NCBI RefSeq assembly: GCF_006345805.1
Contig: NW_021828662.1
Coordinates: forward strand, 1-7,901
Direction of reading: 5' to 3'
DNA length: 7,901 nt
Source: Octopus sinensis
Lineage: Eukaryota
Shown here: one piece after another, positions 215-6,564 of the stretch
Layout: each line of letters begins with the position of its first letter
Position numbering within the stretch: the first letter of the stretch is position 1
Notes under the pieces: generated by a model
The model's input: only the letters and a program-made list of their open reading frames with translations
Told to the model about the DNA's origin: nothing
Databases searched by the model: none
Program-made: the position numbers and the translations under genes

Positions 215-276
215 GACAAGGGAGACAATCCCCTTACGCTCTATCTGCGAACGTACGGGGGATTGTCTACCTTGTC
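215..276. other. GC-rich 62-nt stem-loop
   Basis: GACAAGG (215-221)/CCTTGTC (270-276), then a G-A mismatch, AGACAATCCCC (223-233)/GGGGATTGTCT (258-268), a T-G wobble, and TACG/CGTA with one bulge. Loop is 13 nt. Confidence 0.8.
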
Positions 277-1200: not shown

Positions 1201-1304
1201 GTTTTTCGTAATTGTGCTGTCTGTGTGTCTGCGATTGTGTAAGCGAGTGTACGCTTGTGAACTACGCGTATGCCTCTGTGTGTGCGTATATACATACATA
1301 CATA
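1201..1304 (+). repeat. Direct repeat copy 1 (~104 bp; copy 2 at 2409-2512)
   Basis: gtttttcgtaattgtgctgtctg...aagcgagtgtacgctt...actacgcgtatgcctctgtgtgtgcgtatatacatacatacata recurs at 2409-2512 with about two single-base indels. Confidence 0.95.
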
Positions 1305-1305
1305 T

Positions 1306-1337
<32 letters not shown>

Positions 1338-1985: not shown

Positions 1986-2123
1986 AAGAGCAATAAAGAT
2001 CAAGTTAATTTAAAAAATTTACTGAATATGGTACCTAACTTAGATGCACAAAAAAAACTATACTATTTAACAATACAGTAATGTGGGGTGATTATAAGCG
2101 AGAAAGAGCAACAAGATGGATAG

Positions 2124-2216
2124 GTTTTTAGTACGATCGTTTCATACAAGGACAGGTTTTATTAAAAGTTGCAAAGATTACAGCTAAACGAGTCCCGTAC
2201 TCATCAGCTAAAATAC
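2124..2216 (-). ncRNA. Type I hammerhead ribozyme, second copy on the minus strand
   Basis: The reverse complement reads gtaTTTTAG-CTGATGA-GTACGGGAC-...-GTCCTTGTAT-GAAA-C-GATC-G-TA-CTAAAA. Core is at plus-strand 2201-2207 (tcatcag), GAAA at 2140-2143 and H17 at 2132. Core and helices are identical to the 2703-2798 copy; the only difference is a 3-nt indel in the helix II insert. Confidence 0.85.
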
Positions 2217-2408
2217 ATGTAGTTCTCTAGACATCCTATGTGTTTTGAGGCTATACTCATGAAGTAATGTAGATAATAAACAGATTTCTAAAGTTCATTA
2301 AGTTCTTTAAAGATGATGCATAGTCTTATCACCAGAATTTTAAAAAAGTTTTGGTAGCATCACAGAGAAGGTGACCTAATCCATATGAATTTCCATAGAT
2401 ATGATGTG

Positions 2409-2512
2409 GTTTTTCGTAATTGTGCTGTCTGTTGTGTCTGCGATTGTGTAAGCGAGTGTACGCTTGGAACTACGCGTATGCCTCTGTGTGTGCGTATATA
2501 CATACATACATA
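2409..2512 (+). repeat. Direct repeat copy 2, filling the spacer of the inverted repeat
   Basis: Near-identical to 1201-1304. Confidence 0.95.
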
Positions 2513-2702
2513 TATATATATATCTATGGAAATTCATATGGATTAGGTCACCTTCTCTGTGATGCTACCAAAACTTTTTAAAATTCGTGATAAGACTATG
2601 CATCATCTTTAAAGAAACTTTAATGAACTTTAGAAATCTGTTTAATTATCTACATTACTTCATGAGTATAGCCTCAACACTGGATGTCTAGAGAACTTAC
2701 AT

Positions 2703-2798
2703 GTATTTTAGCTGATGAGTACGGGACTCGTTTATATGCTGTAATCTTTGCAACTTTTAATAAAACCTGTCCTTGTATGAAACGATCGTACTAAAAAC
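2703..2798 (+). ncRNA. Type I hammerhead ribozyme (minimal helix III with palindromic loop, extended helix II)
   Basis: Helix I TTTTAG (2706-2711) pairs with CTAAAA (2791-2796). Core CTGATGA at 2712-2718. Helix II GTACGGGAC (2719-2727) pairs with GTCCTTGTAT (2769-2778), with one bulge and G-U at 10.1-11.1. GAAA at 2779-2782. Helix III AC/GT is closed by palindromic loop GATC (2784-2787). Triplet GTA at 2788-2790 predicts cleavage after 2790. All core elements lie in type I order. Identified by eye; activity is untested. Confidence 0.85.
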
Positions 2799-2825
2799 CA
2801 TCCATTCTTGTTGCTTCTTTCTCGC

Positions 2826-3012
2826 GTATATATATATATATATATTATATATAATATACACGTATATATATCCGTGTGTGTGTTTGGTCTTATAGACGCG
2901 TTCCTGCGGTTTGTGAAACAGGTTTTTCTTTAATTCCTGCAACTCTGCCTCGATTATGTAAAAACACATACACACACACACGCGCGCATACACACACACA
3001 CACACCACACAT

Positions 3013-4075: not shown

Positions 4076-4291
4076 ACTAATGTAGGATAAATTAATTTTC
4101 GAGAAAAACAATTTTATCAATGGCCAGCATATCAAAAAATACCTTTAACGGTTAAATTTATAAATAACTTACAAAATAAGGGCAAAAGAAAAATTCTAAT
4201 GCCAAATATGCTGAAAAAAAGACAAAATTGTCAATAACCATTATAAGTGATAACATTTTTTTTTCGAAAAAAAATTTTATCCTACATTAGT
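4076..4291. mobile_element. MITE-like unit with ~30-bp imperfect terminal inverted repeats
   Basis: actaatgtaggataaa (4076-4091) is the perfect reverse complement of tttatcctacattagt (4276-4291) and extends imperfectly inward (ttttcga...). No convincing target-site duplication, so the MITE call is tentative. Confidence 0.35.
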
Positions 4292-4627
4292 GAAAGTTTC
4301 TAGTTCGAATCACACGTGTCCCGAGATGTGCCGAAGATTTTCTATTTTGAAAATATTTGGGGTATTTAGGTCTGCTCAGGACTTAGGGCTTGCTTTTTCC
4401 GTGGGTATGAGTAAGTATTTCATTTATGTCTTATGTATTTATCGCTGAGGAGGGGAAAATTCTTATGAATTAACCCCGAAATTGGGACCAATATGGTAAT
4501 AACGGATTTTTTTAGAAATTTCTATTGGCTTCTTTTGAGACACATAAATTATAATGGTTATGACAATTTTGTGTTTTTTTCGGCATATTTGGCATTAGAA
4601 TTTTTCTTTTGCCCTTATTTTGTAAGT

Positions 4628-4764: not shown

Positions 4765-4983
4765 TATTAATTAGAGACAAACCACTATTATGCAATCAAA
4801 CAAAGAAAGACTTAATCCAATACATAAAAATTTTATATAAATTAAATATAATAAGATATCCACTACGATGAAACGATCGTAGTGGATATCTTAATTATAT
4901 TTATTTATATAAAATGTTTTATGTATTGGACTAAGTCTTTCTTTGTTTGATTTGCATAATAGTGGTTTTGTCTCTAATTAATA
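4765..4983. repeat. Long fold-back inverted repeat (~105-bp arms, 6-nt loop)
   Basis: 4765-4869 is the reverse complement of 4876-4983, with a few 1-nt indels and one substitution. Apex: gatatccactacgat-GAAACG-atcgtagtggatatc. Confidence 0.95.
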
Positions 4984-5237
4984 ATCTATATATATATATA
5001 TATATATAATATATATATATATTCTCCAAAACAACGAACAAAGAAAAAAACACGGAAACGAGCGAAAGACAGAACCTGAATTATCCTGTACGACATCTCC
5101 CTCAAAATAACGCAAAAAATTCTTCATCGCCATTCTTTGGCGTTTCGGCATAGAATCGTTTGAGATGGGATTTCAAGACCGTCAGCCATATTTACGTGTT
5201 AAAAATAACCATTGTTGTTGATAGTGGTGTTTTGTAG

Positions 5238-5960: not shown

Positions 5961-6012
5961 ACTCACTAACACACTGCTACACCAATACGGCCAACGCAGA
6001 CACATACCCATA

Positions 6013-6048
6013 GACACACACACACACACATATATATATAGTATGAAT

Positions 6049-6080
<32 letters not shown>

Positions 6081-6564
6081 TATGAATACACACACACACA
6101 CACACATATATATATAGTATGAATACACACACACACACATATATATATAGTATGAATACACACACACACACATATATATATATATAGTATGAATACACAC
6201 ACCACACACACTATATATATAGTATGAATACCACACACACACACATATATATATATATGAATACACAACACACACACATATATTATAGTATGATACACAC
6301 CACACACAATATTTATATATAGTATGAATACACACACACACACACACATATATATAGTATGAATACACACACACACACACACATATATATATAGTATGAA
6401 TAAACACACACACACACATATATATATAGTATGAATACACACACACACACACACATATATATAGTATGAATACACACACACACACACACACATATATATA
6501 GTATGAATATACACACACACATATATAGTATGTATATATACACACACATATACACACACACACA
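6013..6564 (+). repeat. Compound minisatellite, ~15 units of (CA)n(TA)nGTATGAATA, ~35-bp period
   Basis: The anchor TAGTATGAATA recurs near 6039, 6078, 6115, 6148, 6185, 6220, (6256), (6286), 6320, 6355, 6392, 6427, 6462, 6499 and (6526), separated by variable CA and TA runs. Confidence 0.95.

What the first reader, a model, noticed from the sequence alone, without database searches (positions are those of the whole stretch)
2703..2798. Complete type I hammerhead ribozyme with an atypically long helix II
Seen in sequence: the full core (CUGAUGA, GAAA, GUA) in type I order, a 6-bp helix I (8 bp with one bulge) and a 2-bp helix III capped by palindromic GAUC. Helix II has 9 bp followed by a 41-nt insert that can fold further (gttta/taaaac, tgtaa/ttgca). 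Established knowledge: minimal type I hammerheads with a very short helix III and a palindromic loop are typical of Penelope-like elements and metazoan non-LTR retrozymes, and are proposed to cleave as dimers. Inference: the ~60-nt helix II arm, the G-U at 10.1-11.1 and the GUA site make this a non-standard variant that short-helix-II motif scans could miss. ACGAUCGU is an 8-nt palindrome that would allow an intermolecular helix III.
Basis: partly seen in the sequence, partly recalled or inferred. Interest (0 to 1): 0.85.

Follow-up and report, generated by a model that had tools for sequence, protein, structure and literature searches.

The report
Hammerhead ribozyme motif in a repeat
The described hammerhead self-cleaving RNA motif is really there, and twice, inside a ~300-base non-coding repeat of the kind left by Penelope-like retroelements in invertebrate genomes. 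It is an ordinary, probably weak, dimer-dependent member of a known class, and its activity and conservation could not be tested here.

Summary
These are CUGAUGA, GAAA, the GUA site, a 6/8-bp helix I, a 9-bp helix II with a 41-nt insert, and the palindrome ACGAUCGU.

Rfam's type I hammerhead model aligns end to end but scores only 22 bits against a gathering score of 34. That is very unlikely for one 7.9-kb window, but only borderline at the scale of a whole genome.

- The motif has a second, near-identical copy on the minus strand (2126-2213).
- Both copies sit in ~301-nt non-coding, AT-rich units (2100-2399 minus; 2526-2826 plus), arranged head to head beside (TA)n arrays.
- A third exact GAAACGATCGTA lies at the centre of a 215-bp palindrome (4770-4985).

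This layout matches published insertion signatures of Penelope-like elements (PLEs) and their non-autonomous derivatives. Their hammerheads have long helix II stems and small palindromic helix III stems.

The hammerhead fold is not the predicted ground state, helix III cannot form in cis, and no sense-strand tandem partner exists at this locus. No relatives were found in any searchable collection, so covariation could not be tested.

Verdict: probably a genuine hammerhead motif of the PLE/retrozyme lineage, and a new member of a known kind. Interest is modest.

The parts
2703..2798 (+). Hammerhead motif, copy B. Helix I 2706-2711/2791-2796; CUGAUGA 2712-2718; helix II 2719-2727/2769-2778; 41-nt insert 2728-2768; GAAA 2779-2782; palindrome ACGAUCGU 2782-2789; predicted cut after A2790.
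   Evidence: Sequence. Rfam RF00163 at 2706-2796, 22.0 bits, below the gathering score of 34. Arm fold.
2126..2213 (-). Hammerhead motif, copy A. It is identical to copy B except for a 3-nt deletion (TAT) in the helix II insert. CTGATGA at 2207-2201; GAAACGATCGTA at 2143-2132; predicted cut after 2132.
   Evidence: Rfam RF00163, 22.2 bits.
2526..2826 (+). Repeat unit B. About 301 nt, 33.6% GC, no ORF. The hammerhead lies at unit positions ~181-271, and 36 nt follow the cut site. The 3' end abuts a (TA)n array at 2827-2871.
   Evidence: Alignment A1, blastn, six-frame translation, TRF, GC content.
2100..2399 (-). Repeat unit A, head to head with unit B. About 93% identical, with 13 difference events, mostly small indels.
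   Evidence: (I5, I7).
2408..2516 (+). Spacer X2 between the 5' ends of units A and B. It is a direct duplicate of X1 (1201-1306).
   Evidence: Alignment A2; D18.
1201..1306 (+). X1, the upstream copy of the spacer sequence. It is followed by microsatellites and has no repeat unit next to it.
4770..4985 (.). A ~215-bp palindrome with two ~100-nt arms, head to head. Its 6-nt centre GAAACG lies inside a third exact GAAACGATCGTA (4870-4881), which matches the 3' half of the hammerhead (14-mer ATGAAACGATCGTA shared with unit B). There is no CUGAUGA. The right arm ends at a (TA)n array (4987-5022).
   Evidence: 3 matches found, 0.02 expected; arm alignment; 14-mer E = 0.025.

Best explanation
The motif is most likely a genuine hammerhead of the Penelope-like-element / non-LTR-retrozyme lineage. 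It is carried near the 3' end of a ~301-nt non-coding, non-autonomous repeat unit, present here as two head-to-head copies inserted in microsatellite-rich DNA.

Inferred mechanism:
- In a sense transcript, helix I (6-8 bp) and the long helix II arm position the CUGAUGA/GAAA core.
- Cis helix III is only 2 bp, so the active fold needs a second sense copy.
- The second copy's ACGAUCGU pairs with the first to give an 8-bp intermolecular helix III (a double hammerhead).
- Cleavage would then occur after GUA (2790/2791), leaving 5'-OH and 2',3'-cyclic phosphate ends.
- In such families this trims multimeric transcripts to unit length.

At this locus the partner copy is antisense. The motif here is therefore probably an idle solo copy, and at best a slow cleaver.

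What is shown: the sequence anatomy, the second copy, the repeat unit and its arrangement, and the sub-threshold model match. What is inferred: the lineage, the need for a dimer, and any cleavage.
For: - The consensus is complete and Rfam type I aligns end to end on both copies.
- Chance expectation for one window is 1e-6 to 1e-4. Published hammerhead densities in PLE-bearing animals are thousands to about 126,000 per genome (PMC4209133, PMC7229834), so a real motif is a priori far more likely than a chance one.
- The motif shows traits not demanded by the consensus but typical of PLE hammerheads (PMC4209133). These are a long helix II with a bulged base and a small palindromic helix III; shrimp, fly, rotifer and mosquito PLEs are cited as having this form.
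- It lies in a ~301-nt, 33% GC, ORF-free repeat unit, the size and composition reported for metazoan retrozyme monomers.
- The copies are head to head, the plus-strand unit (B) ends at a (TA)n array, and 36 nt follow the cut site. PLE insertions are described with an adjacent inverted copy, a 30-40 bp tail and a microsatellite/(TA)n bias.
- A third exact GAAACGATCGTA sits at the junction of another head-to-head pair.
- The intermolecular ACGAUCGU duplex is predicted at -10 to -12 kcal/mol.
Against: - The Rfam score is 12 bits below gathering. The same E-value implies about 4 chance hits per Gb.
- 10.1-11.1 is G-U, whereas G-C is the most conserved stem pair (PMC3088659, PMC4209133).
- The unpaired base between A9 and 10.1 that is typical of PLE hammerheads is absent.
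- The hammerhead fold is -9.8 vs an MFE of -16.3 kcal/mol. Helix I and the base of helix II have about 17% probability, and cis helix III about 0%.
- Competing hairpins sequester CUGAUGA and GAAA/GUA.
- There is no RT/GIY-YIG ORF, no tandem array and no pLTR structure in the window.
- The unit is not unusually self-paired (z +0.49 and -0.61).
- The two copies show no significant excess conservation of the motif (P = 0.06).
- No relatives were found anywhere, so there is no covariation evidence.
Confidence: 0.65

Rival explanations
1. Chance look-alike. An AT-rich dispersed repeat (SINE- or MITE-like) happens to contain CUGAUGA, GAAA and complementary flanks. It has no hammerhead ancestry and no cleavage.
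For: - The match is below the Rfam threshold, which converts to about 4 chance hits per Gb.
- A loose descriptor gives about 20 chance hits per Gb.
- One scan of JGI metagenome contigs with the core, helix III and the innermost helix I pair returned an unrelated contig that even had a 5-bp helix I by chance (L001).
- The MFE is not the hammerhead fold.
- 10.1-11.1 is G-U.
- There is no significant excess conservation between the two copies.
Against: - Per-window chance is 1e-6 to 1e-4.
- The L001 chance hit lacks any helix II, whereas this motif has 9 bp.
- The palindromic helix III, the long bulged helix II, the repeat-unit context, the head-to-head arrangement and the (TA)n flank of unit B all match the PLE literature, and none was required by the search.
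- The same 12-mer recurs at a second head-to-head junction.
Confidence: 0.2
2. The relevant feature is the inverted repeat, not the ribozyme. Units A and B (300-nt arms, 126-nt spacer) act as a fold-back element or hairpin-RNA (small-RNA) precursor, or are an inverted-duplication or assembly artefact. The hammerhead motif is a passenger.
For: - The arms are ~93% identical and would give a ~300-bp dsRNA if transcribed through.
- The window holds two more inverted pairs.
- The spacer is itself a duplicate of sequence 1.2 kb upstream.
- Differences between copies are mostly 1-4-nt indels, as in error-prone long reads.
- PLE-type structures are noted to confuse assemblies.
Against: - This does not explain why a full hammerhead consensus sits in the arm.
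- Inverted copies are themselves a described outcome of PLE integration, so this reading is compatible with the main explanation rather than opposed to it.
Confidence: 0.1
3. The motif is an efficient monomeric ribozyme in which the ~60-nt helix II arm provides a new stabilising contact, making it a distinct structural subclass.
For: - The arm folds somewhat better than shuffles (z = -1.75, 4.8% of shuffles).
- Its distal stem has 98% probability.
- The fold survives the 3-nt indel in copy A.
Against: - Cis helix III is only 2 bp over a 4-nt loop and has about 0% ensemble probability.
- Published minimal and PLE hammerheads of this form cleave poorly or not at all as monomers, and amphibian ones need dimers.
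- There is no conservation evidence for the insert.
Confidence: 0.05

Closest known systems
Hammerhead motifs in the pseudo-LTRs of Penelope-like elements, especially the arthropod form (Drosophila virilis Penelope; shrimp, mosquito and rotifer PLEs). Cervera & de la Pena 2014, PMC4209133.
   Same: - Type I topology.
- Helix II longer than canonical, with a bulged nucleotide.
- A very small, palindromic helix III that implies a dimeric active form.
- Position near the 3' end of the repeat.
- Head-to-head copies and a short stretch after the motif; unit B ends at a (TA)n array.
   Different: - Helix II here continues into a 41-nt branched insert (a ~60-nt arm), against 6-8 bp.
- 10.1-11.1 is G-U, not G-C.
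- There is no unpaired base between A9 and 10.1.
- Helix I is 6-8 bp, against 2-5 bp.
- No RT/GIY-YIG ORF is within reach, so a link to an autonomous PLE is not shown.
Metazoan non-LTR retrozymes and the newt/axolotl satellite hammerheads. Cervera & de la Pena 2020, PMC7229834; Forster et al. 1988 double hammerhead.
   Same: - A ~300-nt, low-GC, non-coding unit carrying one type I hammerhead.
- A 1-2-bp helix III with a palindromic tetraloop, with cleavage expected only as a dimer.
- Solo monomers are known to be scattered through genomes (bioRxiv 10.64898/2026.07.22.740005).
   Different: - The units are not in tandem: there are two inverted solo units.
- Helix II is not the canonical 4 bp, and there is no recognisable loop1-loop2 contact.
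- The unit is not predicted to be highly self-paired (z about 0).
Rfam Hammerhead_1 (RF00163).
   Same: All 45 consensus positions align, with the core and helix III matching nearly letter for letter (GAAACG..CGU).
   Different: - The score is 22 bits against a gathering score of 34.
- There is a 51-54-nt insertion where the model expects about 8 nt.
- The site has A17 instead of C17, and helix I is A-U rich.

Membership tests
Hammerhead ribozyme, type I | Core C3-U4-G5-A6-N7-G8-A9 and G12-A13-A14 intact | tested here: met
   CUGAUGA 2712-2718 and GAAA 2779-2782. The same holds in copy A.
Hammerhead ribozyme, type I | A15.1-U16.1 pair and an NUH cleavage triplet | tested here: met
   A2782-U2789; the triplet is G-U-A, with the cut after 2790.
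Hammerhead ribozyme, type I | Three helices around the core, with helix I open-ended | tested here: met
   Helix I has 6 bp (8 with a bulge), helix II 9 bp, and cis helix III 2 bp. Cis helix III has about zero ensemble probability.
Hammerhead ribozyme, type I | G10.1-C11.1 closing pair of helix II | tested here: not met
   The pair is G2719-U2778, a wobble. G10.1 itself is kept. Natural active variants with a non-G-C pair here exist (PMC3088659).
Hammerhead ribozyme, type I | Score at or above the Rfam RF00163 gathering threshold | tested here: not met
   22.0 and 22.2 bits against 34.
Hammerhead ribozyme, type I | Covariation in the helices and preferential core conservation across relatives | tested here: inconclusive
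   Only two local copies exist, and they differ in the motif by one 3-nt indel (P = 0.06). No relatives were found in any collection.
Hammerhead ribozyme, type I | Site-specific self-cleavage | not testable with these tools
   This needs in vitro transcription of monomer and dimer constructs.
PLE pseudo-LTR hammerhead | Located in the terminal repeat of an element encoding RT and GIY-YIG endonuclease | tested here: not met
   The window has only low-complexity ORFs, and none in the unit. Only 7.9 kb is visible, so a non-autonomous derivative is not excluded.
PLE pseudo-LTR hammerhead | Long helix II (6-8 bp) and palindromic 15.2-16.2 / loop 3 | tested here: met
   A 9-bp helix II with a bulged U, and the palindrome ACGAUCGU.
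PLE pseudo-LTR hammerhead | Unpaired nucleotide between A9 and 10.1 | tested here: not met
   G2719 directly follows A9 and can pair with U2778.
PLE pseudo-LTR hammerhead | Insertion signature: adjacent inverted copy, 30-40-bp tail, microsatellite target | tested here: inconclusive
   Units A and B are head to head but separated by 126 nt. There are 36 nt after the cut site. Only unit B's 3' end abuts (TA)n; unit A's does not.
Metazoan non-LTR retrozyme | Tandem array (at least a dimer) of 150-450-bp units, each with a type I hammerhead | tested here: not met
   There are only two units, on opposite strands, and no tandem period of ~300 nt.
Metazoan non-LTR retrozyme | Unit of ~300 nt, low GC, non-coding | tested here: met
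   301 nt, 33.6% GC, stops in all frames.
Metazoan non-LTR retrozyme | Highly self-paired unit RNA | tested here: not met
   z-scores are +0.49 and -0.61 against dinucleotide shuffles.

The most novel reading that the evidence does not exclude
[quoted passage not shown] In addition, the palindromic helix III (ACGAUCGU) doubles as the point where reverse transcription snaps back or switches template. That would create the head-to-head copy junctions, as the palindrome centred on GAAACG at 4870-4875 would suggest.
Probability: 0.1. Interest if true: 0.55.

Novelty: new member of a known kind. Interest (0 to 1): 0.3.

Why it matters
If genuine, this adds a hammerhead with an unusually long, branched helix II to the Penelope/retrozyme repertoire. 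It also shows concretely that curated models (12 bits short) and short-stem descriptors under-count such motifs in microsatellite-rich invertebrate genomes.

The recurrence of the helix III palindrome exactly at a head-to-head junction hints that this palindrome may play a part in forming the inverted copies typical of Penelope-like insertions. That mechanism is still unexplained.

Otherwise this is one more solo copy of a class known to occur thousands of times per genome.

Tried and rejected
1. Rfam at gathering score over the whole window found nothing. The E-value mode is swamped by microsatellite-driven miRNA look-alikes, which I dismissed as low-complexity artefacts.
2. I looked for relatives in several ways, and all failed.
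   - The pattern GCTGATGAGN{40,70}TGAAACGATCGTAC gave 0 hits in viral contigs and 0 in bacterial/archaeal genomes.
   - In JGI metagenomes it gave one hit, L001. L001 has no blastn similarity to the window and has no helix II, so it is a chance match.
   - A 411-aa query concatenating all stop-free six-frame peptides of the unit gave no hit at E <= 10.
   - Exact look-ups of 11 window ORFs found none on record.
   - Full-text search for the sequence strings found nothing.
   - Supplementary files of PMC4209133 are not held.
3. I considered a tRNA-derived SINE head, but there is no tRNA-like sequence.
4. I considered a rod-like retrozyme circRNA, but the unit is not unusually structured.
5. I tested for excess conservation of the motif between copies A and B. 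It is not significant (P = 0.06 for the whole motif, 0.09 for core plus stems).
6. Cofolding two monomers cannot represent the double hammerhead, because the pairs cross. Only the helix III duplex energy was usable.
7. I could not identify the organism. A penaeid-shrimp-like microsatellite load is only my impression.

Full report
**What the window is.** The 7.9-kb window is AT-rich (31% GC) and packed with microsatellites: (TA)n, (AC)n/(GT)n, (AAT)n, (AG)n and (TGG)n. It also holds a 35-37-nt minisatellite. It has no credible ORF and no tRNA. It reads like intergenic DNA of an invertebrate animal. None of the collections I could search contains it or anything related, so the organism stays unknown.

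**Checking the observation.**
- Helix I is UUUUAG (2706-2711) paired with CUAAAA (2791-2796). It extends to 8 bp with A2705 bulged.
- The core is CUGAUGA (2712-2718) and GAAA (2779-2782).
- Helix II has 9 bp (2719-2727 with 2769-2778). It begins with a G-U wobble at 10.1-11.1 and has U2773 bulged.
- A 41-nt insert (2728-2768) forms two further small stems.
- A15.1-U16.1 plus one C-G pair close the tetraloop GAUC.
- ACGAUCGU (2782-2789) is a perfect 8-nt palindrome.
- The cleavage triplet is GUA, with the cut after 2790.

**The Rfam test.** Hammerhead_1 (RF00163) aligns across all 45 model positions but scores only 22.0 bits against a gathering score of 34. Its E-value is 0.0025 when just 156 nt are searched. 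Nothing passes the curated threshold in the window.

**How likely is chance?**
- I simulated sequence with the window's dinucleotide statistics. A descriptor requiring CUGAUGA, at least 6 bp in helix I, at least 4 bp in helix II and a short helix III is expected about 0.8 times per Gb.
- If helix III must be palindromic, the expectation falls below 0.3 per Gb. That is about 1e-6 to 1e-5 per window.
- A much looser descriptor gives about 20 per Gb.
- The Rfam E-value converts to about 4 chance hits per Gb at 22 bits or more.
- One scan of the JGI metagenome contigs for the core, helix III and the innermost helix I pair returned one unrelated, GC-richer contig. It even had a 5-bp helix I by chance, but no helix II.
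- The motif is therefore far beyond chance for a single window but only borderline at genome scale. Context has to decide.

- CTGATGA occurs a second time, on the minus strand. The whole motif is repeated at 2126-2213(-) and scores 22.2 bits.
- The two motifs belong to two ~301-nt units, B at 2526-2826(+) and A at 2100-2399(-). The units are about 93% identical, 33% GC, and closed in all six frames.
- The hammerhead occupies unit positions ~181-271, and 36 nt follow the cut site.
- The units lie head to head with their 5' ends facing. They are separated by 126 nt, most of which (X2, 2408-2516) is a direct duplicate of X1 at 1201-1306.
- Unit B ends exactly at a (TA)n array.
- Within the motif the two copies differ only by a 3-nt indel in the helix II insert, and the arm still folds.
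- With 13 difference events in the unit, one falling in the motif is not significantly few (P = 0.06). Most differences are small indels, which could be long-read error.

**A third half-site.**
- The 12-mer GAAACGATCGTA occurs a third time, at 4870-4881(+). This compares with 0.02 expected matches at up to one mismatch.
- It sits at the exact centre of a ~215-bp palindrome, 4770-4985. The two ~100-nt arms are joined by the 6 nt GAAACG, and the right arm again ends at a (TA)n array.
- There is no CUGAUGA there, so it is not a ribozyme.
- It looks like two 5'-truncated copies of a related element joined head to head inside the helix III palindrome.

**A second hammerhead-like motif.**
- My relaxed descriptor, run on the real window, returned the two known copies and one further hit at 4439-4499(+).
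- That hit has CUGAGGA, a GGGG/CCCC helix II starting with G10.1-C11.1, and an 18-nt loop that folds (AAUUC/GAAUU).
- It also has GAAA, helix III UUGGGACCAA, the site UA, and a 6-bp helix I with two wobbles.
- The chance expectation is about 1.6e-4 per window.
- Rfam does not report it at E <= 10, so I treat it only as a lead.

**Comparison with published descriptions.**
- Cervera and de la Pena (PMC4209133) describe metazoan type I hammerheads with a 1-2-bp helix III capped by a small palindromic loop, which act as dimers.
- The same paper describes Penelope-like-element (PLE) hammerheads with a larger helix II of 6-8 bp. The D. virilis variant has a bulged base in the middle of helix II and a short palindromic insertion in helix III; similar motifs with a small palindromic helix III are reported in other flies, rotifers, shrimps and mosquitoes.
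- Craig et al. (PMC8557442) describe PLE insertions as heavily 5'-truncated and often with an inverted copy adjacent at the 5' end. They also note a 30-40-bp tail and a bias for microsatellites such as (TA)n.
- Non-LTR retrozymes are ~300-bp, low-GC tandem units with one type I hammerhead (PMC7229834). They are now argued to derive from PLE pseudo-LTRs and also occur as scattered monomers (bioRxiv 10.64898/2026.07.22.740005).
- The present units match in size, composition, hammerhead style, head-to-head layout and, for unit B, the (TA)n flank.
- They do not match in being tandem or in lying next to an RT/GIY-YIG ORF. They lack the extra base after A9 and the G10.1-C11.1 pair. They are not unusually self-paired (z = +0.49 and -0.61).

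**How it would work.**
- Thermodynamic prediction does not favour the hammerhead fold in a monomer: -9.8 against -16.3 kcal/mol for the ground state. The ground state locks CUGAUGA and GAAA/GUA into two alternative hairpins.
- In the ensemble, helix I and the base of helix II reach about 17%, the distal helix II stem 98%, and cis helix III about 0%.
- The helix II arm alone folds slightly better than shuffles (z = -1.75).
- The ACGAUCGU self-duplex is worth about -10 to -12 kcal/mol.
- The most likely mechanism is therefore the classical double hammerhead. Two sense copies, in a tandem transcript or in trans, pair their helix III strands, and each core then cuts after GUA.
- Published PLE and minimal hammerheads of this style cleave weakly even as dimers. 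In the one PLE reconstituted in vitro, the hammerhead is dispensable for insertion (PMC11167929).
- At this locus the partner is antisense. A read-through transcript would make a ~300-bp hairpin, not a ribozyme dimer.

**Verdict.**
- Weighing a per-window chance of 1e-6 to 1e-4 against the high density of such motifs in PLE-bearing genomes, plus the independent contextual matches, I put 0.65 on a genuine PLE/retrozyme-lineage hammerhead motif in a non-autonomous repeat.
- I put 0.2 on a pure chance look-alike. The remainder goes to readings in which the inverted repeat, or an artefact, is the real feature, or in which the long arm makes it a novel efficient monomer.
- The long, branched helix II is the only unusual trait, and it explains the Rfam miss. 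Without relatives I cannot say whether it is conserved.
- This is a new member of a known kind and is of modest interest.

Noticed in passing
window 4439-4499 (+): A second, unrelated hammerhead-like type I motif. It has CUGAGGA, helix II GGGG/CCCC (G10.1-C11.1) with an 18-nt loop that folds (AAUUC/GAAUU), GAAA, helix III UUGGGACCAA, the site UA (cut after 4493), and a 6-bp helix I with two G-U pairs. The chance expectation is about 1.6e-4 per window, but no Rfam hammerhead model reports it at E <= 10.
   Followed up: partly
window 4770-4985: A ~215-bp palindrome whose 6-nt centre (GAAACG, 4870-4875) lies inside an exact copy of the hammerhead's 3' half (ATGAAACGATCGTA). The right arm ends at (TA)n. 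It looks like two truncated element copies joined head to head within the helix III palindrome.
   Followed up: partly
window 1201-1306 and 2408-2516: A ~110-nt direct duplication (X1/X2). X2 forms the spacer between the two inverted repeat units, while X1 is followed only by microsatellites. The origin is unexplained: a long target duplication, a segmental duplication or a misassembly.
   Followed up: partly
window 4077-4292 and 4549-4627: A MITE-like ~216-bp element with ~45-nt terminal inverted repeats starting CTAATGTAGGATAAA. A 79-nt inverted partial copy of its interior lies 300 nt downstream and ends at (TA)n (I2, 51). The second hammerhead-like motif lies between them.
   Followed up: partly
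window 215-276: An imperfect ~24-bp hairpin (GACAAGGGAGACAATCCCCTTACG / CGTACGGGGGATTGTCTACCTTGTC). It gives weak, sub-threshold miRNA-model hits (mir-368, 27 bits against 58).
   Followed up: no
window 6010-6564: A minisatellite of ~15.5 copies of a 35-37-nt unit, (AC)n(AT)nAGTATGAAT.
   Followed up: no
whole window: Extreme microsatellite load produces more than 200 sub-threshold Rfam miRNA look-alikes (mir-297, mir-3149, mir-466 and others). These are low-complexity artefacts.
   Followed up: no
units A/B, X1/X2 and the arms of the 4770-4985 palindrome: Differences between repeat copies are dominated by 1-4-nt indels. This pattern is typical of error-prone long reads, so apparent divergence between copies may be partly sequencing error.
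   Followed up: no
L001 1976-2068 (metagenome contig Ga0134121_10008229): A chance match to the core plus helix III pattern in an unrelated GC-richer contig. It even has a 5-bp helix I (GUUAG/CUAAC) but no helix II. It is a useful negative control for how far chance can mimic parts of the motif.
   Followed up: yes
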